Part shown: one piece after another, positions 1-60,187 of the stretch
How positions within the stretch are numbered: position 1 is the first letter of the stretch
Layout of the letters: each line of letters starts with the position of its first letter
Virus record (IMG/VR): IMGVR_UViG_3300031951_000003
Location: 248,001-312,000 of that record
Length of the DNA: 64,000 nucleotides
Reading direction: 5' to 3' (one strand)
Notes under the pieces: generated by a model
What the model saw: the letters and a program-made list of their open reading frames with translations, nothing else
Told to the model about the DNA's origin: nothing
Databases searched by the model: none
Position numbers and translations under genes: made by a program

Positions 1-214
1 CGCACACAGTGTTGGACATATGTTATCAATAATCTCAAACCAAGTGCATGAATTTTTTTTCAAACACCAAATCGACCCAGTAACCTTTAAGTTTAAAGGA
101 GGTGATGTTGATGGTTTAATTATTAATGACCCTATGATATTAGAATTCCATTACAAATTAGATGAACTACATAAAGTTCTTTTATACATAACGATGAACT
201 ATGACCAACAGTAA
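1..214 (+). CDS. hypothetical protein (probably 5'-partial)
   Basis: Frame is open from the window start; overlaps the next gene. Confidence 0.6.
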   Translation, partial: AHSVGHMLSIISNQVHEFFFKHQIDPVTFKFKGGDVDGLIINDPMILEFHYKLDELHKVLLYITMNYDQQ

Positions 215-1058
215 GATTTATAGATTAGCCAAAAGGATGTTTAGTGACTTTACTAAACCACCTCAGACTCCAAATGATGTTTACAACACATTGACGGGAG
301 AAAAAAACTATTGGGATTACTTTAAGTATATGGGTCCTGACAACTTCATTAAATTATGTATTGCCACTTGGGGTGTTTCACAAAACATACCCCAAGAACA
401 AATAGAAGAATGGTATGATAAAGTCTTTTTTGCAACAGTCTTTTCAACGGAAGACGAAACCTACTACGATGAATGTGGTATGTGTGATGGAGGAGGACAT
501 GTACGATGTGATAACTGTAATGGAATAGGTGATTTGGAATGTGATGAGTGTGAGGGTGACCTTGAAGTCACTTGTCATTTTTGTGATGGTGATGGTAAAA
601 TAGATGGAGATGACGGACCTGAGGACTGTGATGAGTGCGAAGGTAAAGGACAAAGGGAGTGTGACGAATGTAATGGAACAGGTAAGGTTACATGTCACAT
701 ATGTGGTGGTGATGGGGATGTATATTGTGATGATTGTAATGGTGATGGAAATCTCGAAACCGATGAAAAACTATTTGACATTCAATTTATAGTTTGTTGG
801 AATAGAAACCTTTACGACTTATTCGAAATCAAAGAGGAAGAATTTGAAGAAGTTATACCAACAGATAGATTCTATAATAGTAAATCTATAATTATACTCG
901 GAGAAGTGACACAAGAACACGCTGAACTTTCTGATGAAGTAACCCCAGACCAAATATATTGTTTGGGACTTTATAATCAACTTCCAAATGTTAGATTTGA
1001 ACCGAGAAAACCTAAATTCTTCACAACACCAAGTTGGGACATAAGCCATCTCCAATAA
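201..1058 (+). CDS. protein with an extended DnaJ-type zinc-finger array (8 CxxCxGxG-type motifs), no J domain
   Basis: CGMCDGGG, CDNCNGIG, CDECEGDL, CHFCDGDG, CDECEGKG, CDECNGTG, CHICGGDG, CDDCNGDG; no HPD motif. Confidence 0.8.
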   Translation: MTNSKIYRLAKRMFSDFTKPPQTPNDVYNTLTGEKNYWDYFKYMGPDNFIKLCIATWGVSQNIPQEQIEEWYDKVFFATVFSTEDETYYDECGMCDGGGHVRCDNCNGIGDLECDECEGDLEVTCHFCDGDGKIDGDDGPEDCDECEGKGQRECDECNGTGKVTCHICGGDGDVYCDDCNGDGNLETDEKLFDIQFIVCWNRNLYDLFEIKEEEFEEVIPTDRFYNSKSIIILGEVTQEHAELSDEVTPDQIYCLGLYNQLPNVRFEPRKPKFFTTPSWDISHLQ

Positions 1059-1068
1059 TTTATATAGA

Positions 1069-1548
1069 ATGGATGTAAAATATTTTTTAAAGGTATTAGA
1101 AAAAGAGGGTTATCCAAATCCTGACATTCAATCTATTGCCAAGATGGTTGGATACAACTTAGATTATTTTCTCCTTGGTATAAGAGACAGAGTTGGTGAG
1201 GAAGGTGTAATCGATTTTTGTGAAAAAGCAATAAATAAATTGCAAGGTGAAGATGGAGTCAGGGTTGACTTGGGTGGAGACGAATATTGTTACATAAAAA
1301 TATTTCCACAATACTACGACGAGAGGGAATCGGAAAATGATGTGATTGCTAAAAGTAGTTGGGGCGATTCAAACATATTGAGTTCAGACCCAGAAACAGG
1401 TGATGAGAGCTACTTTACAATTCAAGTAGTAATCGACAATACAGACATGGGTGGTTGGAGTGACTTGGACGAGTTATTGGACCACATCAAAGAACAAGCC
1501 TACAACATAGTATTCCAAAACTGTGGTTTCGGTGTTTGGTGGGAATAA
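1069..1548 (+). CDS. acidic hypothetical protein
   Basis: 159-aa ORF; AATTTAT late-type box 5 nt before the ATG. Confidence 0.75.
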   Translation: MDVKYFLKVLEKEGYPNPDIQSIAKMVGYNLDYFLLGIRDRVGEEGVIDFCEKAINKLQGEDGVRVDLGGDEYCYIKIFPQYYDERESENDVIAKSSWGDSNILSSDPETGDESYFTIQVVIDNTDMGGWSDLDELLDHIKEQAYNIVFQNCGFGVWWE

Positions 1549-1575
1549 AAAAAAAAGGGGAGACCGAAGTCTCCC
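1546..1575 (-). terminator. intrinsic terminator for the minus-strand operon 1618-2476
   Basis: Minus strand reads GGGAGAC-TTCG-GTCTCCC followed by a long T run. Confidence 0.85.
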
Positions 1576-1579
1576 AATA

Positions 1580-1614
1580 GGGGCTGAACGGTTTTGCCAG
1601 CCACTCCACCACCA
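1580..1614. other. tmRNA-ends mini element (5' end fused directly to the 3' CTCCACCA)
   Basis: Plus strand GGGGCTGAACGGTTTTGCCAGC-CA-CTCCACCA-CCA; resembles both termini of Bacteroidota tmRNA (from memory). Confidence 0.5.
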
Positions 1615-1617
1615 AGT

Positions 1618-1917
1618 TTAACGAACTTGGAAACCTTTTGGAAATAATGTGTTGGCTAAAGAGGTAAGAGCCTCAGAACTTAAATATCCAACAACATCAT
1701 CGTTAGCTTCAGGTAAGTAATATTTTGTCACGAAATCACCAGTCTCACTGTCCATAATTGCAATTTCGAAATCATCTTTGAAATCACCATACAACCCTTG
1801 AGCACCCCCAACAATTGAGAGTCCAATTTTTCCATCAGTCATATATGTCTGACGTGCACCCTCAACCATATTTCTATGGGGTTTGGAGTGTTCTATAATA
1901 TTTTCAATCGTTATCAT
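1618..1917 (-). CDS. hypothetical phage protein
   Basis: 99-aa ORF, ATGA-coupled to the upstream gene. Confidence 0.75.
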   Translation of the reverse strand: MITIENIIEHSKPHRNMVEGARQTYMTDGKIGLSIVGGAQGLYGDFKDDFEIAIMDSETGDFVTKYYLPEANDDVVGYLSSEALTSLANTLFPKGFQVR

Positions 1918-2198
1918 AATCCTTTGAGTAATTGTCTTAATTTGATTTCTAAAAGTTCTAATGTGTTCTTATCCTTTGCGGTTTTATTTGGTTTTTTCCT
2001 TAACGAATCTATGAGTTCCTGTATAAAATCAGATTCACTTTTCTCTTGAACCACTTCGGCGTCCTGTATGTCACCCATAGGTTCATCTGCAGGTGTGTAA
2101 GGTAAGGAGCTTTTTTGCCCTTTTTTCTCACCCAATTTATAGGCACCATAAACCAAGGCACCAACTGCTACTATTTTTACTAAATCACTGAATTTCAT
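1914..2198 (-). CDS. hypothetical protein with N-terminal membrane anchor
   Basis: Hydrophobic N-terminus; ATGA overlaps on both sides. Confidence 0.75.
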   Translation of the reverse strand: MKFSDLVKIVAVGALVYGAYKLGEKKGQKSSLPYTPADEPMGDIQDAEVVQEKSESDFIQELIDSLRKKPNKTAKDKNTLELLEIKLRQLLKGL

Positions 2199-2476
2199 TT
2201 TGTTACCTCCGCTTCGATTTTAGATTTATTAATAAGATGGTCAGTTAAAGAATAGAAATCAAGTTTAGTCATAACAATTGAATTAACCAAATGTTTGTGT
2301 GGGATATGAACCAAGAAATCCACACCATTGAAGAAGGTTAAATCAGTTTTCATCTCAATTGAACTTTGAACCATTTTAAGAAAAAGTTTGAACTGAATTT
2401 GATTAACAAAAGTTTCATCCAAAAGGGTTCCGAAAGTTTCATGTAGAATTTTGATGTTGAGACCTGACATGTTCAT
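2195..2476 (-). CDS. hypothetical protein
   Basis: First gene after a host-type promoter. Confidence 0.75.
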   Translation of the reverse strand: MNMSGLNIKILHETFGTLLDETFVNQIQFKLFLKMVQSSIEMKTDLTFFNGVDFLVHIPHKHLVNSIVMTKLDFYSLTDHLINKSKIEAEVTK

Positions 2477-2491
2477 ATTCTTTAATTTCTA

Positions 2492-2522
2492 CAAAGATAA
2501 ACTTTTAAATTCAATTACCAAA
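2492..2522 (-). promoter_or_regulatory. Bacteroidota sigma-A-type promoter
   Basis: TTTG-N19-TATCTTTG on the minus strand. Confidence 0.75.
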
Positions 2523-4758: not shown

Positions 4759-4768
4759 GGCAAAAAAC

Positions 4769-5589
4769 TCTGAGAATACAAGTTTTGGTGAGAATCTTTG
4801 GAAGGATTATGATTTCCCTTCGTTTCCACTTCCTTTTGAGAAGTAATCCTCAGTCACGGTCAATTAGATTAACCAATCCTTAAGTTGTGTACCACTCTCT
4901 CGTTACTCATCACTCTTCGAGGTTGCCACCCCAATTAATCCTTGCGGGATTAGAGAACTTTCAAGAAAATCCTGTCGGGCTTGGGACCCTTCAAGGCTAA
5001 GAACATCTCTTAACTATGTAGTGACCTGTCGCACACAACTGACGAGCACTTTTCCTTGTTTAATTTTGAGTTTGTTAAACCTTAATTAACAAAGTTGGTT
5101 TACGGATGATGAAAGTAGCGGCCCGTCTGAAGCCATGCCATCTTTTGGACGACACGATACTAAGCTACTCTCTGAAGTCTCCCGACCTCCATATTTTGAG
5201 TCAACTTCATAACTAACCTCTTGGTAGAGAGAAAGTTAAGGTTCCATCAGCACCACCTGTTATGAAACTTACCTTGTTCGGTGTTAAGCCAACTCTAATA
5301 TTGAATCACGCAATTACTATGGTGGATGCCATAGTTTCTTACATTAATCCTTCAGGTTATTCTTATTGGTGTTCCCACCTCAATCAAACGACCCGTATCG
5401 CTTGATTACCCAACCACGTTCCCTACAGTGTCACCCTCAGTACTAAAGGTCAGATAATATCCTGATTGCCTACTCGAGTTCCCTTTCGGAAACCGCAGAC
5501 CTCCCAAACCAGGGAGTTCCACTTTATACTATTTTCATAGTTTATTTAATGACCATAGGCGGCCAATATCTTGAACAGAATGTCTCAGA
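4769..5589 (-). ncRNA. large structured non-coding RNA, probably GOLLD-like
   Basis: No credible ORF; many hairpins closed by GNRA loops on the minus strand (GTTTCC-GAAA-GGGAAC, GGTG-GGAA-CACC, GAGGTC-GGGA-GACTTC, ACTAT-GAAA-ATAGT); two domains joined by an AU-rich linker; 7-bp terminal stem; own promoter and terminator; tRNA nearby. Confidence 0.7.
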
Positions 5590-14217: not shown

Positions 14218-14997
14218 TTATAGTTCAGAGTCAAAATTATTTATTTTTTCTAAATTAACAATCTGAAAAACGTATGCCATTATTTTTCTTTTCATTATGG
14301 GTAAGAAAGTTTCCTCCATTGGGAAATCATTCGTGGACTTCAATTCAAAAATAGGTAAATCTTTAAAATGTTCTTCTTCATTCCAAGTTGAGAAGGTTTC
14401 TATAATTGAGTTCAACGTTACATCACTTGGTAATGTGTTGTATATGAGGTTTAAATAAATTTTACTATTGAAATTCTCGTTCTCGGGTTTTTTTATTTCA
14501 TATTCCCAAATGAAAATTTCATTCAAGGATTTTTTGAAATAGTAAACATACCCCTTCCCCGCGGCTAAATTATTTTTATTTCTTTTGAGACTGAGGTCCA
14601 TGTGGTCGTAAGCCATGTTCCAAATTGACTTAGCCATATTGAAGGCGTCAAATAATTTGTTACCAGAATATTTGATTGTCTTGTCAAGTTCATTGGATTC
14701 AGAATCACTTAATTGTCTTGGTTTTTTTTGAACCAATTCTTTAAGAAGAATCTCATCATCACATGACTCGAATGTCTTATTTGTAAGTAGTAACCTATTT
14801 TCTTTGACAAGTGATTGTATGTTAGCCAAATGAAGTGAAAGTTCTACAAAGTCAGGATAAATTTGTAGATTGTTGAAATTGTTTTCGCACTTCTGAAGGT
14901 AATCCAATAAAGTATATTTGTTGTATTCGAAGTCAACAGGTTTTTTCAACATCCAATCGGGCTTCAATCTGAACGGTTGTTTCTTTTGTCTAGCCAT
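14218..14997 (-). CDS. hypothetical protein
   Basis: 259-aa ORF. Confidence 0.8.
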   Translation of the reverse strand: MARQKKQPFRLKPDWMLKKPVDFEYNKYTLLDYLQKCENNFNNLQIYPDFVELSLHLANIQSLVKENRLLLTNKTFESCDDEILLKELVQKKPRQLSDSESNELDKTIKYSGNKLFDAFNMAKSIWNMAYDHMDLSLKRNKNNLAAGKGYVYYFKKSLNEIFIWEYEIKKPENENFNSKIYLNLIYNTLPSDVTLNSIIETFSTWNEEEHFKDLPIFELKSTNDFPMEETFLPIMKRKIMAYVFQIVNLEKINNFDSEL

Positions 14998-19754: not shown

Positions 19755-19783
19755 AAAAAAGGGATTTTTAAATCCCTTTTTTT
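19753..19783. terminator. bidirectional terminator between convergent genes
   Basis: A-run, GGGATTT-TT-AAATCCC-type hairpin, T-run. Confidence 0.8.
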
Positions 19784-22110
19784 CCGCTTGCTAACATTTC
19801 CAATTTTTCTAATTTCCTTTCATGGAAATCTAAAAGGGTGGATTGTTCTTTGATTGCCTCTAAACAAGCTGATATAATCGTTTCAAATCTTATTGATAAC
19901 ATTGTGGTTTCTGGGTCTTCATAAACGAGTTCAGGAAATACCAACTGCAACTCTTGTGCAATAAAACCTATCTGAAGTAACTCGGGTCTTTCATCATCTT
20001 TTATTAGATGGTAGGAAACACCTCTAGTCTTTAATATTTTGTCCAAACTATCTGTAATTGGTCTGATATTAGTTTTGAACCTTAAATCCGATGGTCCAGG
20101 TGCACCTGATGCACCTTGTGCCCCTGTTGGTCCTGTGCCACCTTGTGGACCAGTTCCACCACCTCCACCTTGAGCACCTTGTGGACCTGTTCCTCCTGTT
20201 CCACCACCAGTCCCTTGAGCACCTTGATTACCCGTAGGACCGGTTGGTCCTCCAGGACCTTGAGCACCTTGTGCACCTTGGTTTCCATTACCTTGTGATG
20301 GACCTTGGGCTCCTTGAGAACCAGTTCCACCTCCTCCACCAGGAGGTCCTGTGTGACCTTGAGCTCCCTGTGGACCTCGGTTACCCGTTGGTCCGCCAGG
20401 ACCCTGAGCACCTTGTGCTCCGCCAGGACCCTGAGCACCTTGTCCACCTTGAGAACCTTGAGCTCCTTGAGCTCCTGTTGCACCACCACCACCTTGAGAA
20501 CCTTGTCCTCCCTGTGAACCTTGGGCTCCTTGGTTTCCACCACTGCCTTGAGCTCCTTGCGCACCTTGTCCTCCTGCCGGTCCTTGTGCTCCTTGGTTAC
20601 CTTTACCACCTTGAGCTCCTTGCGCACCTTGTCCTCCTGCCGGTCCTTGTGCTCCTTGGGCTCCTCCTGGGCCTTGAGCTCCTTGCGCACCTTGTCCTCC
20701 TGTTGGTCCCTGAGCTCCTTGGTTACCTTTACCACCTTGTGCTCCTTGAGCACCTTGTCCTCCTTGAGAACCTTGTGAACCTGTGGCACCTACAGGCCCC
20801 TGTGCTCCTTGTGCTCCCTGTCCACCTTGTGAACCTTGACCACCTTTGGCACCTTGTGAACCTTGTCCTCCTTGAGCTCCTTGTCCACCTGTTGGTCCTT
20901 GTGCTCCTTGATTACCACCCGAACCTTGCGCTCCTTGAGCTCCTTGTCCACCTGTTGGTCCTGTAGCACCCTTACCACCTTGAGAACCTTGTCCTCCTTG
21001 AGCTCCTTGTCCACCTGTTGGTCCTTGAGCTCCTTGATTACCACCCGAACCTTGCGCTCCTTGAGCTCCTTGTCCACCCTGTGAGCCTTGGGAACCTGTG
21101 GCACCCGCAGAACCTACTGGACCTTGTGCTCCTTGGCCTCCCTGCGAACCTTGTGAGCCCGTGGCCCCTTGTGCACCTACTGGCCCTTGAGCTCCCTGTC
21201 CACCTTGTGAACCTTGGGAACCTGTGGCTCCTGCTGAACCAACGGGACCCTGAGCTCCCTGTCCACCTTGTGAACCTTGTGAACCTATGGCACCTTGTGA
21301 ACCTTGTCCACCTTGAGCTCCTTGTCCTCCCTGTGAACCTTGGGAACCTGTAGCTCCTTGTGACCCAACTGGTCCTTGTGCTCCTTGACCTCCTTGTGAC
21401 CCTTGGGAACCAACCGCTCCCTGAGAACCTGTGGCACCTTGAGCACCTTGACCTCCTTGTGAACCCTGAGAACCTGTAGCACCTTGTGACCCTACCGGCC
21501 CTTGAGCACCTTGTCCACCTTGTGAACCCTGAGAACCGACCGCTCCCTGTGAACCTGTGGCACCTTGAGCACCTTGACCTCCTTGTGAACCCTGAGAACC
21601 AGTATCGCCTTGTGCACCTATTGCACCCTGAGCACCTTGACCACCTTGTGCGCCTTGTGGACCTACAGCACCTTGGGAACCTTGTGAGCCAGTAATACCT
21701 TGAGCCCCTGTTGGACCTTGTGCTCCTTGACCCCCTTGTGAACCTTGAGCACCTTGACCACCTGTCACTCCCTGGGAACCTTGATTTCCTTGAGCACCTT
21801 GTCCCCCTTGAAAACCAATACTACCTTGAGCACCAGTTGGTTCTCTATTACCAACCCATCCTGTAGAGTTGATAAGTGTTCCTGCTGAATTTTTTAAACT
21901 AGTTGTTATCTTGAGGTTACTATTGTAAGTTACAAATGAAGGTTTATCACTTCTCCAAGCAAGATAAACAATATTACTATTATCTGTCCAATGCAAATGT
22001 AGTAGTGGTGAATCGTCTTCAAGCTTCAAATATGTTGAGGTTGAGCCAGAATCAACGAATTCGACCGTGGGAAACGCATAATCAGGATATATTATTATAT
22101 TTTCAGACAC
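19768..22110 (-). CDS. collagen-like fibre chain C with C-terminal intramolecular chaperone (peptidase S74 type)
   Basis: ~580 aa of Gly-X-Y; SDLRFKTNI cleavage motif; IGFIAQE. Confidence 0.9.
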
Positions 22111-24532
22111 TTAAATTATCTTTTAAAATTTTTATTCTCTCCATTATTGAGATTATTCTTTTCTGTTGTTCTTGAAGTGCACCAATACCCAAACTTACCA
22201 TAAGACCATATTCAACTGATTTAAAGCCCTCCTCGTCTGTCCAAACAACTTCTGGGACGATATCTTCAATTTGCTGTGCAATAAAACCTATTGTTTCACC
22301 AGTAAATGCACTTGGAAGAGATATTGCACGGTTCATTGATATTTTAGGATGGTCAACCCATTCGAATCTAACACCCTCAATACCTTTAACTTTTTCTAAT
22401 ACATTTGTTAAGGATTGAATATTATCTTTAAGTCTTTGGTCTGAAGGTGGACCCTGAGCTCCTTGAGCTCCTTGACCTCCTGTTGGACCAGTTCCACCCT
22501 GAGGACCTGTAGGTCCTACGTTACCTTGAGCACCTTGACCACCTTGGCCCCCACCTGAACCTGTAGCACCTTGGGCACCTTGACCCCCTTGACCACCACC
22601 CGAGCCTTGAGCCCCTTGGGCTCCCGTAGCTCCTGGTCCTCCACCAGGCCCCACTGCTCCTTGGGCACCTTGTCCTCCTGTTCCTCCTGTAGGTCCTGTT
22701 GGTCCCTGTGCTCCTTGGAATCCTGTTGCACCTCCCCCTCCTGTTCCACCTTGAGCCCCAACAGGACCCTGAGCGCCTTGAGCTCCCTGAGCACCACCCT
22801 GTGCTCCTTGAGCACCTGTGGAACCACCTCCACCTTGGCTTCCTTGAGCACCTGTAGTTCCACCTTGAGCTCCTTGAGCACCTGTTGGTCCTTGAGCACC
22901 TTGGTTACCTTGTGCACCTTGGTTACCACCTTGAGCTCCTTGGGCTCCTTGTGAACCTTGGACACCAGGAGCACCTTGTGCACCCGTATTTCCTCCTTGG
23001 GCTCCTTGAGCTCCTTGTGAACCTTGGACACCAGGAGCACCTTGTGCACCTGTTGAAGCTCCTTGAGCTCCCTGAGCCCCTTGAGAGCCCTGAACACCAG
23101 GAGCTCCCTGTGCTCCCGTTGAACCACCTTGAGCTCCTTGGGCTCCTTGGGCACCCTGATTACCTGTCGCACCTTGGGCACCTGTTGAACCACCTTGAGC
23201 ACCCTGTGAACCTTGTGCCCCTTGTGCTCCAGTATTACCTTGAGCTCCTGTATTGGCTCCTTGTGCTCCTTGAGCACCTTGTGGTCCTTGTGCACCTTGG
23301 TTTCCTTGTGCACCTGTATTGGCTCCTTGTGCTCCTTGAGAGCCTTGAGCTCCTTGAGCACCTGTATTACCTTGAGCTCCTGTATTGGCTCCTTGTGCAC
23401 CTTGAGCACCTTGTGGTCCTTGTGCACCTTGGTTTCCTTGTGCACCTGTTGAAGCACCCTGTGCACCTTGCGCTCCCTGTCCTCCTTGTGAGCCTTGACC
23501 ACCTTGAGCACCTGTTGTTCCTCCTTGGGCTCCTTGTGCTCCTGTTCCACCTTGAGCTCCTTGACCTCCTTGTGCCCCCGTGGTTCCCCCTTGGGCTCCT
23601 TGAGCACCCTGTCCTCCTTGTGAACCTTGAGCTCCTTGGGCTCCTGTTGTTCCTCCTTGTGCTCCTTGAGAACCTTGTGCACCTTGTGCTCCAGTTGAAC
23701 CCTGAGCACCTGTTGTTCCTCCTTGAGCTCCTTGAGCTCCTTGTCCTCCTTGTGCCCCCTGTGCACCCTGAGCACCTGTTGTTCCTCCTTGGGCTCCTTG
23801 TGCACCTTGTCCTCCTTGGGCTCCTTGTGCACCCTGAGCACCTGTATTAGCTCCCTGAGCTCCTTGTGAACCCTGTCCTCCTTGTGCTCCTTGAGCTCCT
23901 TGAGCACCAATTGTTCCACCTTGAGCACCTTGAGCACCTTGTCCTCCTTGTGCACCTTGTGAACCCTGAGCACCTGTGTTAGCTCCTTGAGCACCTTGAG
24001 CTCCTTGACCACCTTGAGCTCCTTGACCACCTTGAGCTCCCGTATCCGCTCCTTGAGCTCCCTGTGCTCCCTGTCCACCCGTAGCACCTTGAGCTCCTTG
24101 AGGTCCTATCGAACCTTGTGAACCTTGAGCACCTACATTTCCTATTGCTCCCTTAGCACCTTGAGAACCTTGCGCTCCTTGAGCACCTATTGACCCCTGA
24201 GAGCCTGTAGTTCCTGAAGCACCTTGTGCTCCTTGAGCACCGGTAAATCCAGATATACCCTCAGCAGGTCCTACCCATTCGCCAACTTCATTAATCATTT
24301 CTATACCACCCACATACAATCCATATATTCCTCCGGTGACCTTTGCACCATCAACGAGTAATTCAGCTCCGATAGTTGCTATGTTACTTTTTGTTGTTGA
24401 TGAAACTTGGATATTTCCAGAACCATTAACAGATAATTGTATTTTGTCCGCGGATGAAATCCCTTCAAATTCCATATGAGGGTTAGGGTTTCCACCACTT
24501 TTACCATTGGGATATATTATAACGTCAGACAT
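22103..24532 (-). CDS. collagen-like fibre chain B (periodically interrupted) with S74-type chaperone
   Basis: ~605 aa of Gly-X-Y with about 20 Gly-X-Y-Z stutters; SDQRLKDNI; IGFIAQQ. Confidence 0.9.
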
Positions 24533-27156
24533 TAATTAAGAAGGTTTTCAAGTTCATTTATTTGTTTTTCGATATCTGATATAAATACTTGTTGCTCTTT
24601 AATACCTTCAATCAAAACGGCGTTCATTCTATTATATTCAACAGTATAAAAACCATCAGAACCGATTTTAACTACTGTCGGGAAAAATTCTTTAACATTT
24701 TGAGCTATCAGACCAATCGAGTGAAGCTTGTTATTGTTTAATCTTTTAATGTAATCGCTTTTCGTCAACTTTTCATTCCAATCGTATTCTACGACTCTAA
24801 GTTCAAGAATTTTTTCAAGTGTATTATCAAGTGATTTAACATTATATTTGACTCTTCTATCAGAGCAGCTGCCCCCGTATGTAAAATAACCATTGAAGTT
24901 AGTAGAACCATAATACAAATATGTAACACCAATCGTAATTGAACCATAGGTCCACTGAAATGTTGAGTTTTGACAAGTTGTAACATCTGAAGCGAGTTGG
25001 ATGCTAAAATTTGCTTGCCAGTTAATATCTTGGGAATAAACTGTTCTGTTTTGACATGCCCCCGCGTTTACACAAATGGCGTAATAAGAATCACCACATA
25101 GATTCTGAACAAAACAAGAGGTGAACGAGCCAGGTCCTGTTGCACCTTGTGCACCTTGGGCTCCTTGTCCTCCCGTAGGACCCGTAGGACCCGTAGGACC
25201 ACCCGACCCTTGTGCACCTTGGTTACCCGTAGGACCAGTAGGACCACCTGGTCCTTGTGCACCTTGGTTACCTTGAGGTCCTGTTACACCTGGTGCACCT
25301 TGAGCACCTTGACCTCCGTTTGGACCTTTCGGTCCAGCAGCTCCTTGCGCCCCTTGGCTACCCGTAGCACCCCCACCACCTTGAGGACCTTGAGCACCTT
25401 GAGCACCCTGACCTCCTGTTCCACCTTGTGGTCCTGGAGCACCTTGAGCACCTTGATTTCCTGTTGCTCCTTGTGCACCTGGATGACCTGTAGCACCCTT
25501 ACCACCCTGTGAACCCTGAGCACCTGTTGCTCCCTGAGGACCAATTGCACCTGTATTACCCCCTGCACCTTGTGCACCTTGTGGTCCTGTGGCACCTTGT
25601 GCTCCTGGATGTCCTGTTCCTCCACCAGAACCTGTTGGACCTTGTGGTCCTGTGGCTCCCTGTGCTCCTGGATGTCCTGTTCCTCCACCTGAACCTTGAG
25701 GACCTTGTGGTCCTGTGGCTCCTTGTGCTCCTGGATGTCCTGTTCCTCCACCCGAACCTGTTGGACCTTGTGGTCCTGTGGCTCCTTGTGCTCCTGTATG
25801 ACCAACGGCACCTTGAGCACCTTGAGGTCCTGTTGGTCCTGTTGCTCCTTGAGCTCCTGGATGTCCTGTGGCTCCTTGAGCACCCGTCGAACCTGCATTA
25901 CCTGTAGCACCTTGAGCACCAGGGTGACCTGTGTTTCCTGTTGGCCCCTGTGCACCTTGTGGTCCTGTAGCACCTTGAGCACCCGCATGACCCGTCGCAC
26001 CTTGTGCCCCAGTAGAACCAGCATTCCCCGTAGCACCTTGTGCACCTGGATGACCTGTATTTCCTGTTGGTCCCTGTGCTCCTTGTGGTCCTGTAGCACC
26101 CTGAGCACCAGCATGACCCGTCGCACCTTGTGGTCCTTGAGCCCCTTGAGGACCTGTAGCACCTTGAGGTCCTACTGCACCTGTAGAACCTGTAGGTCCT
26201 TGTGCACCTGTATTACCTGTGGCTCCTTGTGGGCCAACATTTCCTTGTGCTCCTGTATTACCTTGTGCTCCTGTGTTACCTGTGGCTCCTTGTGGTCCTA
26301 CGTTACCTGTAGCCCCGGTAGCTCCCTGAGCCCCTGTGTTACCTGTGGCCCCTTGTGGTCCAACATTTCCTTGTGCTCCTGTATTACCTTGTGCTCCTGT
26401 ATTACCTGTGGCCCCTTGTGGACCAACATTTCCTTGTGCTCCTGTATTACCTTGTGCTCCTGTGTTACCTGTAGCTCCTTGAGCACCTGTATGACCCTGT
26501 GCACCTGTATTTCCTTGTGCTCCTGTATTACCTGTGGCCCCTTGTGGTCCAACATTTCCTTGAGCTCCCGTGTTACCTTGCGCTCCTGTGTTACCTGTGG
26601 CTCCTTGTGCACCTGTATTACCCTGTGCACCTGTATTTCCTTGTGCACCGGTATTTCCCGTGGCTCCTTGTGCACCTGTATTACCCTGTGCACCCTGGGT
26701 TGTGCCTTTAGCACCCTGTGCCCCTTGGGGTCCAACCTGACCTTGTGCACCTGTATCACCTTGTGCACCTTGTATTCCTTGTAACCCTTGTGCACCCAAA
26801 TTTCCCTGTGCACCCGTATCACCCTGTGCACCTGTATTGCCCTGCGCACCTTGGTGACCCTGAGCCCCTTGAGCTCCTGCAATACCTGTGGTTGGTCCAA
26901 TCCAATCCAAAGTTCCATCAATTACTTGAACTGAGTCAATAGCAAAATAATCAGAAACATTAAGCGTTACAACACCAATTGTTTGGCTAGAACGGTCAAT
27001 AACTAATTGATTAGTAACTGATGCTGAGCTAAGATTAATCTTACCCGTTGGCACAACTCTCCAAACACTTGTTCCACTGTTAACCCAATTTATATAAGGG
27101 ACTCTGTCTGGTGTTCTAGAAATGGAATTACTCGGAACTATTAAAATATCACCCAT
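24532..27156 (-). CDS. collagen-like fibre chain A with a Cys-containing tip domain and S74-type chaperone
   Basis: ~586 aa of Gly-X-Y; 88-aa insert; SDRRVKYNV; IGLIAQN. Confidence 0.9.
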
Positions 27157-30535: not shown

Positions 30536-30563
30536 TAAAAAAAGAAGGGAGAAAACTCCCTTC
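30536..30563 (-). terminator. intrinsic terminator
   Basis: GAAGGGAG-TTTT-CTCCCTTC followed by a T run. Confidence 0.8.
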
Positions 30564-30568
30564 AAAAA

Positions 30569-31324
30569 TTAACCACAATATGATTCAGCCAATTCCCAAA
30601 GACCGGTGTTGATTTTATTAATGGTTTGGAAGTTTTTCAATTCCTTCATTGTAACCAAACGACCTCTCTTGGATTGATATTTAGTTCCACCACGGACAAA
30701 TTTTTCTTGAATCACATTAAAGACTTTCCAAACAGAATTACCGCTATCAGCATCTCTCTCGGGACGAAGTAATTCTTCAACGTTTATTGAGGTAGGAACT
30801 GAACCTTTTTCCCAACGAAGGAGGGATGCCTTATTCATCATATCAATTGTTCTTTCTTCGTTGAGTTCTGTCGTTTCCATACGACCTACAGCTCTTTGGA
30901 TAAGTGGGAGACGGTCAGCGAACTCATCAGTGATTTGACGAACAACCCCCATGTCAACACGCATATGTTTAACAGAAATACTGTCAGCAACTGATGTTGG
31001 AACAGTAAGACCATTTGAGCAAACCAAACGGAAAAGACCGGCGCTCACTGAAAAGGTGCTCATGCCATTGTGTGAATTTCGAATCACTGCCTCAACCAAT
31101 GAATCTCCGACTTGAGGTAATTCTCCATTTCTTAAACGTAGTTCGTGACTCGAAAAACGACCTTGACCTATTTGTTTTGCGGAATAGAGTCTCCAACCTT
31201 CACGGTCAAAATTTTCCAAAATTTCCATGGTTGGAACGAAGGTATACTTCTCAGACATTTTAGGGTCTGCACTTGTAGAGAAAACGGCGGGAACTGTGTT
31301 ACGAATAGAATCGAGTGTAATCAT
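30569..31324 (-). CDS. DUF932/DUF945-family protein
   Basis: SEKYTFVPT...NSHNG...AGLFRLVCSNGL...WKVFNVIQE...LWELAE. Confidence 0.88.
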   Translation of the reverse strand: MITLDSIRNTVPAVFSTSADPKMSEKYTFVPTMEILENFDREGWRLYSAKQIGQGRFSSHELRLRNGELPQVGDSLVEAVIRNSHNGMSTFSVSAGLFRLVCSNGLTVPTSVADSISVKHMRVDMGVVRQITDEFADRLPLIQRAVGRMETTELNEERTIDMMNKASLLRWEKGSVPTSINVEELLRPERDADSGNSVWKVFNVIQEKFVRGGTKYQSKRGRLVTMKELKNFQTINKINTGLWELAESYCG

Positions 31325-57337: not shown

Positions 57338-60187
57338 TTAATCCTGTGCACATTTACAGCTCGCGTTTGAACATTGTTTTGATGAACAAGAGATAAGAGA
57401 ATTATCTACGCTGTCAATACAATAAGCAACTATTGTTGGGTCAGGTCCTGGACTTCCTGAAACGTTGTCTATCATATTACCCGAAGAATTTCCACTTGTT
57501 ATTGTTACGGTTTTATAAAATACCCCATAGTTACTCGTCTCAATCTGAATCGAAAAACTAGTATCAATTGTCACAATGTTTTGCGTAGTAATTACTATGT
57601 CCACTGCGGGTTCACCCAAATTAGTAGTTGGTGTCACAATCAAACTTGTCACAGGATTACAAACAATACTTCCACCATCACTATTATAAACCATCTTGAA
57701 CACATCACCTGCAACAAGATTAATCGGGTTATACATAACAACACTAACACTTTCATTTATTCCCGCAGAACAGAATCCGTTGAAAATACCCGAGCCAACT
57801 TCAACGTCATTCAGCATTGCTTTAACCTCAACATAATAATTGTCGCTTGTTGGTGTTTGGAAGTTTGCCTGCATGTATTGAACATTATTATTTGGGGATA
57901 TACCACACGGATATGTGGATAGTCCTGAATCAATTGTAAGAACACCACCAGTAGGGCTATATCTGAAATTTTGGAAACAACCCACCTTATTTGGTCCTGA
58001 ACAAATTAATCCTCCAACTAATTGATTCATGTTGAGATAAATGTTACCACTTTGAATAACACCTTGACATGTTACACATTCAGGTGTATCAACCTGACCT
58101 TGATAGGTGATTGAGTTGTTATTCACCTGTGTTTTTTCTGTATCACCTACCGCTGAACAACAAGTGCATCCTTTGATGACTACATCAGAAACTTGAAAAG
58201 AAATTGTCTGTTGTAGATTAGTTGTGCAGTTGGACTGAGCTCCAACTTGACCATCGGTTATTGTTAATATCGAAGTAGTAGAACCTGAAACAGTGCTAAA
58301 ATTTGAGAGTTCCAACGAATATTGGTCAGTCTCAGTATCAATTCTTTGTGTCTCGGGATTACAGTTTGGTCTACTTCCAATAACAGTATCTATGTCTGTG
58401 GAGAAAGGTGTCTTTGTTGAACCATTTTGTAGAATAGTAAAGTTGTCTACACAAGTTCCTGTTCCTGGTCCATTGAATGTCTTGATAGATGATGTTGTCA
58501 AATTGAAATTAACCACAACTCCATTAGGTATAGGCGGAACCGAAGTAACATAAAAATATGTTGTTTTCGTTGAAATATTATTTGAAGATACCTCAGTGTT
58601 TAATTGTGGTTGTGTTATAATATTAATTTGATATGTTTGTGGACTTCCCACTGAACTTATTTGAACCGATTGATTAACTATATTATTCGCGGCATCTATA
58701 ACTCTAATATTGTATGTGTTCGGGCAAAGATTTGTAAAAATATTTGAGGTTTGATATGATACCCCGTTATTAATCGAATATTGATATGGTGCTAATCCAA
58801 ATCTCGCACTAACCGTTATTGAACCATCACAGTTCGTTTGGTTGTTGCAAGACGCATCTTGTTTTGTTGTTGTCACTTGAAGTGGTATTATTGTAGGACA
58901 AGAACCTAAAGTTACATTTATAGTATAAGTTTGTGTTCCACCAAGTAAACTCCAACCACCTAAAGGTGGTAATGAAGTGGTTGAGGACGCAAAAATACCT
59001 CCCCCCACAGGGTTTATTGGTGTTATCAAATCTGAACCAACAAGTTCCCATCTTGTTCCTTTCCACACAATGTTCTGTGAATTACTACTTGTCCATCTTG
59101 GTTTACCATTAGACGTTCCATTTTGACTGAACGTTGTTGGTCCTACAACGTTAGAATTGTTGTATGCCAAGAAACAAATGTTGGCGTAAACTGGTGGAGG
59201 TGTTGTGGATGGCGTTACAGTTGGGGATGGAGTTGGACTTGCTGTCGGTAAAAGTATGGAGCAAACTGTGTTTGCAGTATAGTCACCGTAATAATCAACA
59301 ACGGTAACAGGATAATAACCAGGTCCTATGTTAGTTAAAGTTCTTGTTCTTTGACCATTTGCCCAATAAATTGAATACGGACTTGTTCCTCCTGTGATGT
59401 TCAAAGTGAGAATCCCATCATATGATTCTGAGTTTGAAGGCATTTTGAGAAGATTACAATTCACACCCAAATCGAAAAGGGTAAACGGTTCACAATTGTT
59501 TTTCGGACGATAAACTGGTGTTGGGTTAGGTGTTGGTGTTTGACTTGGTGTTACATTTGGTGTCAGACTTGGCGTTTGAGTAGGGGTCGGTGTAGTTGTG
59601 AGAGTAGTTGTTGGTGAGGCTGTTTGTGTTGGTGTTGGGGTCAGGCACGCTGTGGTTGCAGGCTCGTTCAATAAAACTACACCACTATAAACTTGAGTAT
59701 AATCTAACGAAACAAGGACTTCAAAACTTTCACCTTTTTGGAAATTACCACAACAATCTGTATACCAAAATATTCCAGTTGTATAAGCACTTCCACACAC
59801 TATTGGGGTGGATGATGGGGTCTGCGTTGGTGTAGGGGTATTAGTGGGAGTTTTGGTAGGGGTCGGTGTTTGGGTTGGAGTTTTAGTTTGCGTAATAGTT
59901 TGTGTTGGTGTTGGTGGTGGGGTTTGAGATTGGGTTGGCGGGGGGGTTTGAGTCGGTGTTTGTGTAGGGGTTTGGCTCGAAGAAGGAATAGGGGGCGTGG
60001 GACAAGCACCGAGAACTGTGAGTATTATGAACTCACCTGGAGCTTGACCTGGCACAGTATAGGAACAAACAGTTATTGTGCCGCTCGGTGGAATTGTAGG
60101 AATAGGATTCAATTCACAGTCAAACCCTATAGGAGTTGCAGGTAAAATTGCGGACCCATTTGTTATTTGATAGTTAATACAAGCCAT
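57338..60187 (-). CDS. Pro/Thr-rich, Cys-rich tail/surface protein with two SprB-like repeats
   Basis: DGILTLNITGGTSPYSIYWANG...GPGYYPVTVVD and DGSITVSA..GLAPYQYSINNG...FTNLCPNTYNIRVID. Confidence 0.75.
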   Translation of the reverse strand: MACINYQITNGSAILPATPIGFDCELNPIPTIPPSGTITVCSYTVPGQAPGEFIILTVLGACPTPPIPSSSQTPTQTPTQTPPPTQSQTPPPTPTQTITQTKTPTQTPTPTKTPTNTPTPTQTPSSTPIVCGSAYTTGIFWYTDCCGNFQKGESFEVLVSLDYTQVYSGVVLLNEPATTACLTPTPTQTASPTTTLTTTPTPTQTPSLTPNVTPSQTPTPNPTPVYRPKNNCEPFTLFDLGVNCNLLKMPSNSESYDGILTLNITGGTSPYSIYWANGQRTRTLTNIGPGYYPVTVVDYYGDYTANTVCSILLPTASPTPSPTVTPSTTPPPVYANICFLAYNNSNVVGPTTFSQNGTSNGKPRWTSSNSQNIVWKGTRWELVGSDLITPINPVGGGIFASSTTSLPPLGGWSLLGGTQTYTINVTLGSCPTIIPLQVTTTKQDASCNNQTNCDGSITVSARFGLAPYQYSINNGVSYQTSNIFTNLCPNTYNIRVIDAANNIVNQSVQISSVGSPQTYQINIITQPQLNTEVSSNNISTKTTYFYVTSVPPIPNGVVVNFNLTTSSIKTFNGPGTGTCVDNFTILQNGSTKTPFSTDIDTVIGSRPNCNPETQRIDTETDQYSLELSNFSTVSGSTTSILTITDGQVGAQSNCTTNLQQTISFQVSDVVIKGCTCCSAVGDTEKTQVNNNSITYQGQVDTPECVTCQGVIQSGNIYLNMNQLVGGLICSGPNKVGCFQNFRYSPTGGVLTIDSGLSTYPCGISPNNNVQYMQANFQTPTSDNYYVEVKAMLNDVEVGSGIFNGFCSAGINESVSVVMYNPINLVAGDVFKMVYNSDGGSIVCNPVTSLIVTPTTNLGEPAVDIVITTQNIVTIDTSFSIQIETSNYGVFYKTVTITSGNSSGNMIDNVSGSPGPDPTIVAYCIDSVDNSLISCSSKQCSNASCKCAQD

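What the first reader, a model, noticed from the sequence alone, without database searches (positions are those of the whole stretch)
1580..1614. 32-nt element consisting only of the two ends of tmRNA: alanine microhelix or anti-tmRNA antisense RNA?
Seen: the plus strand reads GGGGCTGAACGGTTTTGCCAGC-CA-CTCCACCA(CCA), between convergent genes and abutting a minus-strand terminator. Established: tmRNA starts GGGGCTG(A) and ends CTCCACCA with a G3-U alanine identity pair; Bacteroidota tmRNAs, as I recall them, begin GGGGCTGACCGGnTTTGACAGC. Inference, two options. (a) The plus-strand RNA folds GGGGCUG/CAG(CCA)CUCC-ACCA, keeping G3-U, the A discriminator and CCA, and acts as a decoy for AlaRS, SmpB or 3'-end-sensing defences. 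(b) The early minus-strand mRNA (promoter 2492-2522) ends in a terminator-stabilised 3' UTR complementary to both strands of the host tmRNA acceptor stem, which could block trans-translation. A deleted ssrA remnant or att-like site is also possible.
Basis: partly seen in the sequence, partly recalled or inferred. Interest (0 to 1): 0.75.

Follow-up and report, generated by a model that had tools for sequence, protein, structure and literature searches.

The report
Phage antisense RNA against host tmRNA
A freshwater jumbo phage of Bacteroidetes carries, just after one of its early genes, a conserved ~90-base RNA that is the mirror image of the two ends of its host's ribosome-rescue RNA (tmRNA), so it most likely binds and disables that RNA. 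No phage trick of this kind turned up in the literature searches.

Summary
Window 1580-1611 (+) matches the commonest Bacteroidota ssrA 5' end at 20 of 22 bases. It is followed by CA and then the ssrA 3' end, CTCCACCA.

The element is not a decaying remnant. A covariance model finds it in all 39 distinct relatives, whose flanking protein is only 40-100% identical. It has three covarying helices and invariant GGUGGUGGA and CC(C).

The working strand is the minus strand, which is antisense to ssrA. Five things point that way:
- The only terminator is on the minus strand.
- G.U pairs favour that strand, 55 cells against 7.
- The element travels with the minus-strand operon, not with the convergent gene.
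- The same module sits, in the same orientation, inside the tmRNA genes of at least four other phage lineages.
- The plus-strand alanine microhelix folds poorly.

Folding predicts that it hybridises with both ends of host-type tmRNAs (ddG about -26 kcal/mol). A shuffled control gives -5, and the phage's own divergent tmRNA also gives -5.

Best reading: an anti-tmRNA antisense module in the 3' UTR of an early operon. Expression and effect on tmRNA are untested.

The parts
1551..1639 (-). The whole conserved RNA unit: P1, G-rich linker, P2, CC(C), spacer and terminator.
   Evidence: Covariance model R1 scores 77.3 bits (E 1e-18) here and 65-107 bits in 38 other distinct relatives. 95.8% of cells are paired, 15 of 22 pairs show double changes, and 0 of 500 shuffles reach that.
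1612..1630 (-). Hairpin P1 (CCAAGUU / AACUUGG). Its loop holds the P0002 stop codon (1618-1620).
   Evidence: 97% of cells are paired. It covaries to CUUGUUU/AAACAAG and CCAUAUUUU/AAAAUAUGG. It is fully non-coding in distant relatives.
1604..1611 (-). Linker UGGUGGAG, the exact complement of the tmRNA 3' end CUCCACCA. The family-invariant GGUGGUGGA is 1605-1613.
   Evidence: These columns are invariant in 33 to 39 relatives. The linker is partly unpaired in ensemble folds. It pairs with the last 8-9 nt of tmRNA in cofolds.
1580..1601 (-). A 22-nt stretch antisense to tmRNA nt 1-22, including the terminal CCCC (1580-1583).
   Evidence: 20 of 22 bases are identical, on the plus strand, to the commonest Bacteroidota ssrA 5' end.
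1582..1602 (-). Hairpin P2 (arms 1598-1602 and 1582-1586). It is the mirror image of the tmRNA acceptor stem. Its loop AAAACC is complementary to tmRNA GGUUUU.
   Evidence: 90% of cells are paired and 5 of 7 pairs show double changes. There are 33 G.U cells usable only on this strand, against 5 A.C cells.
1547..1575 (-). Intrinsic terminator: stem with a UUCG tetraloop, then ten U.
   Evidence: Terminator scan. 99% of cells are paired and 7 of 8 pairs show double changes. The GACTTCGGTC terminator core occurs at no other terminator in the genome.
1618..2476 (-). Three-ORF operon whose 3' UTR carries the element: 2195-2476, 1914-2198 and P0002 at 1618-1917.
   Evidence: ORF list. The P0002 family is always upstream of the element. 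No function was found for it.
2492..2521 (-). Bacteroidetes-type promoter motif TTG-N19-TATCTTTG, 15 nt upstream of the operon's first ATG.
   Evidence: The pattern occurs 8 times in the window against 2.0 expected, and 0 of 100 shuffles reach 8. That this is the consensus for the Bacteroidetes housekeeping sigma factor rests on my own knowledge.

Best explanation
The minus strand of window 1551-1639 encodes a conserved structured RNA of about 90 nt. It ends the mRNA of a three-gene operon driven by a host-type promoter, which suggests early expression.

Its core is the reverse complement of a 'minihelix' made from the two ends of a Bacteroidota tmRNA. UGGUGGAG matches the 3' end CUCCACCA. Hairpin P2 plus CCCC matches tmRNA nt 1-22. 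A 5' hairpin (P1) and a UUCG terminator flank the core.

Inferred mechanism:
- The linker UGGU docks on the single-stranded ACCA tail of host tmRNA, or the P2 loop docks on the GGUUUU region of nascent tmRNA.
- Branch migration then unzips the acceptor stem, and each strand is captured by the phage RNA.
- With its ends held this way, tmRNA cannot be charged by AlaRS or bound by SmpB and EF-Tu, and the long duplex may be cut.
- Host trans-translation is therefore shut off.
- The phage's own tmRNA has a different acceptor stem and 5' region, so it escapes.

Shown: the ssrA origin, the conservation, the structure, the strand and the predicted complementarity. Inferred: expression, binding in vivo and any effect on trans-translation.
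For: Match to ssrA:
- 20 of 22 bases match the ssrA 5' end, and the ssrA 3' end follows.
- Relatives keep 13-20 of 22 bases, with z up to 4.2 against shuffles.

Conservation and structure:
- The element is in all 39 distinct relatives, while the P0002 protein falls to 40% identity.
- It has three covarying helices.
- GGUGGUGGA and CC(C) are invariant, and they correspond to the universally conserved G1-G3, U70-C72 and ACCA of tmRNA.

Strand:
- The terminator is on the minus strand only.
- G.U cells usable only on this strand number 55, against 7 A.C cells. P2 folds better on this strand in 21 relatives and worse in 11.
- The element stays with the P0002 operon when the convergent gene is replaced or absent.
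- The same module (G-UUU-YC, P1, UGGUGGA, P2, CCCC) lies in the same orientation inside other phages' tmRNA genes: L432-type, L452, L398 and L422.
- None of 92 host tmRNAs contains it.

Predicted binding:
- Cofolds give ddG of -18 to -30 kcal/mol with 12 Bacteroidota tmRNAs, using tmRNA nt 1-22 and the last 8-9 nt.
- The 17 relatives tested give -9 to -27.
- A shuffled core gives -5.1 +/- 1.9, the phage's own tmRNA -4.6 and the phage tRNA-Ala -8.1.

Context:
- A host-type promoter lies upstream.
- The host phylum fits. The phage encodes bS21, and bS21-encoding freshwater phages are predicted to infect Bacteroidetes (PMC9723584).
Against: - There is no expression data. No RNA run holds the stretch, and nothing was laid on it.
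- P2 is a stable hairpin and the tmRNA ends are tightly paired and protein-bound, so invasion may be slow. The energies are nearest-neighbour minimum-free-energy values without pseudoknots or proteins.
- The most divergent relatives are only weakly complementary to the tmRNA panel: L207 -8.8 and L213 -10.3, against -5.1 for the control. Many have CCC rather than CCCC.
- The actual hosts and their tmRNAs are unknown. Window position 18 (C) differs from all 92 sampled ssrA genes.
- A complete relative (G001) has the element but no tmRNA of its own, so a simple 'swap' is not universal.
- The 7+3 invariant bases also match tRNA-Ala.
- The G.U count comes from an alignment fitted to this strand and from related sequences.
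Confidence: 0.55

Rival explanations
1. Structural 3'-end module only. An ssrA- or tmRNA-derived remnant was taken over as a stabilising or terminating 3' structure for the operon mRNA, or as a protein-binding site. It never meets tmRNA.
For: It sits exactly between a stop codon and a terminator. P1, P2 and the terminator are ordinary hairpins. The terminator resembles a T-arm, so the unit could be the 3' part of an old phage tmRNA. The last GG of the linker is predicted to pair with CC in cis.
Against: A pure stability element does not explain several things. The unpaired UGGUGGA is invariant. Relatives retain 13-20 of 22 ssrA-identical bases although the stems are free to covary. The same module recurs inside functional phage tmRNAs.
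Confidence: 0.17
2. The module binds alanine-acceptor ends but does not act as a plain inhibitor of host tmRNA. It might tether host tmRNA or tRNA-Ala to a phage RNA, sense uncharged CCA ends as a T-box does, or regulate the phage's own tmRNA in cis.
For: The invariant bases (UGGUGGA plus CCC) fit tmRNA, tRNA-Ala and the phage's own tmRNA equally well. The linker UGGU equals the T-box UGGN motif (my knowledge). In several phages the module is part of the tmRNA molecule itself.
Against: Complementarity is much longer for canonical host-type ends (8-14 contiguous nt at the 5' end) than for the phages' own ends (4-5 nt). No Stem I or specifier and no Rfam T-box hit were found. Nothing lies downstream of the terminator to regulate.
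Confidence: 0.13
3. Plus-strand mimic. A mini-ssrA or alanine microhelix RNA (GGG, hairpin, UCC-ACCA) acts as a decoy for AlaRS, SmpB or defences that sense CCA ends.
For: On the plus strand, G1-G3, U70, A73 and CCA are all invariant. The convergent gene could read through into the element, because no plus-strand terminator is found.
Against: The acceptor pairs are predicted in only 14 of 39 variants. P2 would carry 33 mismatch cells on this strand. There is no T-arm for SmpB. The CCA is internal, and no conserved promoter was seen on the plus strand. The element persists where the convergent gene is replaced or absent. In the four phage tmRNA lineages that carry the module, the tmRNA gene fixes the opposite orientation.
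Confidence: 0.07
4. DNA-level site: an att-like or recombination target related to ssrA-integrating elements.
For: ssrA is a common integration site (my knowledge).
Against: The genome has no tyrosine integrase. The genome has direct terminal repeats. Only 8 bases of the ssrA 3' end are present. Compensatory changes and G.U asymmetry indicate selection on an RNA.
Confidence: 0.02

Closest known systems
tmRNA / ssrA (Rfam RF00023), Bacteroidota type
   Same: On the plus strand, the sequence matches the first 22 nt (20 of 22) and the last 8 nt of ssrA.
   Different: It has no T-arm, tag frame or pseudoknots, and neither ARAGORN nor Rfam calls it. The selected strand is the opposite one.
Antisense stem-loop RNAs of plasmid copy control (CopA/CopT, RNA I/RNA II). 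This comparison rests on my knowledge.
   Same: A hairpin that mirrors a target helix, with exposed loop or tail bases that can start pairing, followed by strand exchange.
   Different: This one is encoded in trans by a phage. Its target is the open-ended acceptor stem of a host non-coding RNA, with the ACCA tail as the toehold.
Prophage-encoded anti-sRNAs (AgvB and AsxR of EHEC). This comparison rests on my knowledge.
   Same: Phage RNAs that neutralise a host regulatory RNA by base pairing.
   Different: Those mimic mRNA targets of Hfq-dependent sRNAs. This one is antisense to tmRNA termini and sits in a 3' UTR or inside a phage tmRNA.
3'UTR-derived sRNAs such as CpxQ and SroC. This comparison rests on my knowledge.
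   Same: It shares the terminator of an mRNA and has a conserved seed upstream of it.
   Different: No processing site or chaperone is known here, and the target is not an mRNA.
Phage-encoded tmRNAs (huge phages, PMC7162821)
   Same: They occur in the same genomes. Several phage tmRNAs carry this module internally.
   Different: The window's element is not a tmRNA. This phage's own tmRNA lies about 124 kb away, lacks the module, and has different ends and tag.
T-box riboswitch pairing of UGGN with the NCCA end. This comparison rests on my knowledge.
   Same: UGGU between two helices could pair with ACCA-3'.
   Different: There is no Stem I or specifier and no regulated downstream gene. Complementarity extends far beyond 4 nt.

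Membership tests
tmRNA (RF00023) | tRNA-like domain with a T-arm closing on an acceptor stem | tested here: not met
   ARAGORN finds no gene in the window. Rfam gives no tmRNA hit at the gathering threshold or at E<=10.
tmRNA (RF00023) | Tag reading frame and pseudoknots | tested here: not met
   Only 35 nt lie between the terminator and P1.
tmRNA (RF00023) | Terminal sequences GGGGCUGA... and ...CUCCACCA | tested here: met
   20 of 22 and 8 of 8 bases match 92 Bacteroidota ssrA genes, on the plus strand.
Alanine acceptor minihelix | Stable helix with G3.U70, then A73 and CCA | tested here: inconclusive
   The bases are present, but the three pairs have P>0.5 in only 14 of 39 variants. In the window the probability of G3.U70 is 0.11.
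Alanine acceptor minihelix | CCA at the 3' terminus; chargeable by AlaRS | not testable with these tools
   The CCA is internal in the DNA. There is no RNA-end data.
Trans-acting antisense RNA | Complementarity to the target beyond chance | tested here: met
   ddG of -26 against -5 for the shuffled core.
Trans-acting antisense RNA | Transcribed on the antisense strand, with a promoter and terminator | tested here: inconclusive
   A promoter motif and a terminator are predicted on that strand. Expression could not be observed.
Trans-acting antisense RNA | Binds the target and alters it in vivo | not testable with these tools
   This needs binding and tagging assays.
Intrinsic terminator | GC-rich hairpin followed by a U-run | tested here: met
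   The stem covaries in relatives.
Phage att site in ssrA | An integrase in the genome and a long contiguous match to the ssrA 3' end | tested here: not met
   No PF00589 hit. Only 8 nt of the 3' end are present.
T-box leader | Stem I/specifier plus an antiterminator that competes with the terminator | tested here: not met
   No Rfam T-box match. By inspection I found no alternative pairing with the terminator arms.

The most novel reading that the evidence does not exclude
Phages of several lineages run a 'tmRNA swap'. A portable anti-acceptor module (P1, UGGUGGA, P2, CCCC) captures both ends of the canonical host tmRNA and knocks out host trans-translation. Phage-encoded tmRNAs then take over ribosome rescue. 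These have altered acceptor stems that the module cannot invade, and tags that lack the ALAA degron. In some phages the module is built into the phage tmRNA itself. In the bS21 huge phages it rides on an early mRNA.
Probability: 0.3. Interest if true: 0.9.

Novelty: new variant of a known kind. Interest (0 to 1): 0.8.

Why it matters
tmRNA-SmpB is the main ribosome-rescue system of bacteria. Phage-encoded tmRNAs have been catalogued without a clear rationale. A natural antisense RNA aimed at the tmRNA termini would be the first known RNA inhibitor of trans-translation. It would give phage tmRNAs a purpose, as replacement of the host system. It would also show a new pairing logic: toehold invasion of an acceptor stem through its ACCA tail.

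The module is short and conserved, and it is found in two genomic settings. The idea is therefore directly testable in Flavobacterium or Bacteroides laboratory strains.

Tried and rejected
- **Known RNA families:** the Rfam E-value scan of 1400-1800 gave only sub-threshold hits, the best being TarB at E 0.019, driven by the terminator.
- **Isolated phages:** there were no matches for the locus, for P0002, or for the module-bearing tmRNAs of L432 and L452.
- **Flanking proteins:** P0001 and P0002 have no Pfam or PHROG family. P0002 models confidently (pLDDT 94), but its only structural neighbours are uncharacterised phage-like proteins.
- **Translation-related genes:** the genome has no CCA-adding enzyme, SmpB or integrase.
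- **RNA evidence:** only three tiny lake metatranscriptome contig sets were offered, and nothing was laid on the window.
- **Ideas dropped:**
  - Stop-codon readthrough, because the frame after the stop is not conserved.
  - A repeated genomic motif, because the element is single copy.
  - Pairing with the neighbouring GOLLD RNA, which has no CCACC.
  - A weak model hit at window 30538-30638, which is an ordinary terminator.
  - A G-quadruplex, a Chi-like site and an SD-like site, considered by eye and not supported by conservation or copy number.
- **Alignment method:** plain MAFFT plus RNAalifold missed P2 because of register shifts. The covariance-model alignment fixed this.
- **Literature:** searches found no described natural anti-tmRNA RNA.

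Full report
**Observation**

The plus strand of window 1580-1614 reads GGGGCTGAACGGTTTTGCCAGC, then CA, then CTCCACCA, then CCA. It lies between convergent ORFs P0001 (1069-1548, +) and P0002 (1618-1917, -). Next to it is the only terminator-like site in 1000-2700. That site is on the minus strand, with its stem at 1558-1575 and ten T at 1547-1556. ARAGORN and Rfam find no tRNA or tmRNA in the window.

The window is bases 248001-312000 of a 321,139-bp phage genome with direct terminal repeats. The genome encodes ribosomal protein bS21. That places it with the bS21-encoding huge phages of freshwater lakes, which are predicted to infect Bacteroidetes (PMC9723584).

**Is it more than chance?**

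ARAGORN places the first base of a tmRNA exactly on the pattern in 92 of them. Their 5' consensus is GGGGCTGACCGGTTTTGACAGC, varying only at positions 9, 10 and 13. Their 3' end is CAGCTCCA(CCA).

The window is identical at 20 of 22 positions. By my estimate, such a match anywhere in the phage genome is expected about 8e-5 times, before counting the adjacent CTCCACCA. The element is therefore derived from the two ends of a Bacteroidota ssrA gene.

**Conservation**

Protein-guided searches with P0001, P0002 and a P0002 family profile fetched 80 loci from IMG/VR, with P0002 identity of 40 to 100%. A covariance model finds the element in all 39 distinct sequences at 65-107 bits. This includes L212, where an extra ORF separates it from the P0002 homologue.

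Read on the window's minus strand, the anatomy is:
- hairpin P1;
- the invariant GGUGGUGGA;
- 1 to 4 variable bases;
- hairpin P2;
- the invariant CC(C);
- an A/U-rich spacer;
- a hairpin with a UUCG tetraloop and a U-run.

On the model-guided alignment, 95.8% of cells form pairs and 15 of 22 pairs show changes on both sides. No shuffle out of 500 reaches these values, and sliding the partners drops pairing to 30-51%. In the distant relatives the ORF ends upstream of P1, so the whole unit is non-coding. It occurs once per genome. Its terminator sequence heads no other terminator in the genome. This is not a decaying remnant.

**Which strand?**

Five lines of evidence agree on the minus strand, which is antisense to ssrA.
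1. The U-run and the UUCG loop exist only on that strand.
2. G.U cells that pair only on that strand number 55, of which 33 are in P2. A.C cells that would pair only on the other strand number 7. An alignment-free comparison of P2 folding energies favours the same strand in 21 relatives and the other in 11.
3. The convergent gene is a P0001 homologue in most relatives. It is an unrelated 277-aa protein in L173, L182, L203 and L222, and is missing in L212 and L213. The element always follows the P0002 operon.
4. On the plus strand the alanine-type pairs G1:C72, G2:C71 and G3.U70 are all likely in only 14 of 39 variants. In the window the probability of G3.U70 is 0.11.
5. A pattern scan followed by the covariance model found the same module in unrelated phage contigs: G-UUU-YC, P1, UGGUGGA, P2, CCCC.

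In those contigs the module lies inside the phages' own tmRNA genes, between the tag region and the T-arm, and in the sense orientation of the tmRNA. The cases are:
- the L432/L435/L379 type, 305 nt, with the module at about nt 174-240;
- L452, 319 nt, with the module at about nt 176-237;
- L398 and L422, whose tmRNA 3' ends I recognised by eye.

The tmRNA gene fixes the strand there, and it is again the strand antisense to canonical ssrA ends. None of the 92 host tmRNAs contains such a module.

**What it can pair with**

Cofolding the 89-nt window RNA with full-length Bacteroidota tmRNAs (CCA added) gives intermolecular pairs between element nt 29-60 and tmRNA nt 1-22 plus the last 8-9 nt. 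After paying for unfolding both partners, ddG is -18 to -30 kcal/mol.

| Partner or control | ddG (kcal/mol) |
|---|---|
| Window element with six host-type tmRNAs | -25.6 (mean) |
| Seventeen relatives with the same panel | -9 to -27 |
| Window element with shuffled core | -5.1 +/- 1.9 |
| Phage's own tmRNA | -4.6 |
| Phage tRNA-Ala | -8.1 |

The phage's own tmRNA lies at C1:125442-125837. Its 5' end is GGGGAAG, its tag is AEEATVVA, and host tags end in ALAA or AMAA. It pairs only through GGG and UCCACCA.

The tmRNA-embedded modules have 8-14 contiguous bases complementary to the canonical 5' end and 7 to the 3' end. Their carriers' own acceptor stems (GGGGGUA, GGGGUAG, GGGCUCG) fit poorly. 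The family-invariant bases are exactly those that are universal in tmRNA: G1-G3, U70-C72 and ACCA. The variable bases fall where ssrA varies or inside P2.

**Most likely mechanism (inferred)**

P2 is the mirror image of the acceptor stem, because the antisense copies of two complementary strands are themselves complementary. The linker UGGU can dock on the free ACCA tail. The P2 loop (AAAACC) can dock on the GGUUUU of the D-loop analogue, which stays unpaired in nascent tmRNA until the 3' end is made. Strand exchange would then hold both tmRNA ends in phage-RNA duplexes. That would block RNase P and AlaRS recognition and SmpB and EF-Tu binding, and it would create a double-stranded substrate for RNases.

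The operon has a consensus Bacteroidetes promoter motif, TTG-N19-TAnnTTTG, at 2492-2521. The motif occurs 8 times in the window against 2.0 expected. This suggests early transcription by host polymerase and fits a host-takeover role.

**Caveats**

- No transcript data exist for this locus.
- The energies ignore tertiary structure and bound proteins.
- The true hosts are unknown.
- Some relatives are only weakly complementary to the panel.
- A complete 326-kb relative (G001) has the element but no tmRNA or tRNA-Ala of its own. Another complete relative (G002) has a tmRNA with yet another acceptor stem.
- The flanking proteins gave no functional clue.
- The unit may descend from the 3' part of a phage tmRNA, since its terminator resembles a T-arm. 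That would not change the reading of the module.

**Comparison with known systems, and novelty**

The element works like a trans-acting antisense RNA and like the mirrored stem-loops of plasmid copy control. It recalls prophage anti-sRNAs. It is not a tmRNA, a tRNA-like substrate, a T-box or an att site (see the membership table). Full-text searches found no natural antisense RNA against tmRNA and no description of this module in phage tmRNAs.

I rate it a new variant of a known kind, with high interest, conditional on experimental proof.

Noticed in passing
L432:11272-11576 (-), L435:1058-1362 (+), L379:3292-3593 (+), L452:5140-5458 (-), L398:8236-8299 (+), L422:1646-1713 (-), L418:3875-3937 (+): Other phages carry the same anti-acceptor module. 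In L432, L435, L379 and L452 it lies inside the phage's own tmRNA gene as called by ARAGORN. In L398 and L422 I recognised a tmRNA 3' end downstream by eye. In L418 no tmRNA end is visible nearby. The tags are AKVVNMTPRAEMRAAA-like and GETKVVPMYSRFLAKVA, and the carriers' acceptor stems differ from the canonical GGGGCUG.
   Followed up: partly
window 4767-5172 (-): A full-length GOLLD RNA (RF02032, 322 bits) lies 3 kb from the element. It shows no complementarity to the element's seed.
   Followed up: partly
G000 C1:125442-125837 (L001:1501-1894): The phage encodes its own tmRNA (Rfam 76 bits) with the unusual tag AEEATVVA, a 5' end of GGGGAAG and no encoded CCA. The genome has 24 tRNAs but no SmpB and no CCA-adding enzyme.
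   Followed up: partly
G000 C1:108720-108872 (L371): A ribosomal protein bS21 gene places the phage in the bS21 huge-phage group of freshwater Bacteroidetes (PMC9723584).
   Followed up: partly
L034:2353-2440 (-), L036:6463-6551 (+): In this lineage the stop codon of the P0002 homologue is lost (CGT AAA). The frame runs through the module (..FQVRKTWWW..), and the next in-frame stop lies beyond the terminator U-run. Terminated transcripts would therefore be non-stop mRNAs.
   Followed up: no
window 19768-27156 (-): Three tandem genes encode collagen-repeat proteins with a C-terminal Peptidase_S74 chaperone domain, which looks tail-fibre-like. They explain the GC-rich island (0.53 against about 0.33).
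   Followed up: partly
window 201-1058 (+): A 285-aa protein is packed with CxxCxGxG-type cysteine repeats. Its only matches are sub-threshold hits to DnaJ zinc-finger and Anti-TRAP families.
   Followed up: no
window 1631-1636 (-) and the same position in all relatives: A conserved G-UUU(U)-YC lies just 5' of P1. It is kept even where non-coding and in the modules found in other phages. It could extend P1 through U.G pairs with UGGU and so mask the seed. Its role is unexplained.
   Followed up: no
window, 8 sites (for example 2492-2521, 14232-14261, 58610-58639): The Bacteroidetes promoter motif TTG-N19-TAnnTTTG is enriched, with 8 sites against 2.0 expected.
   Followed up: partly
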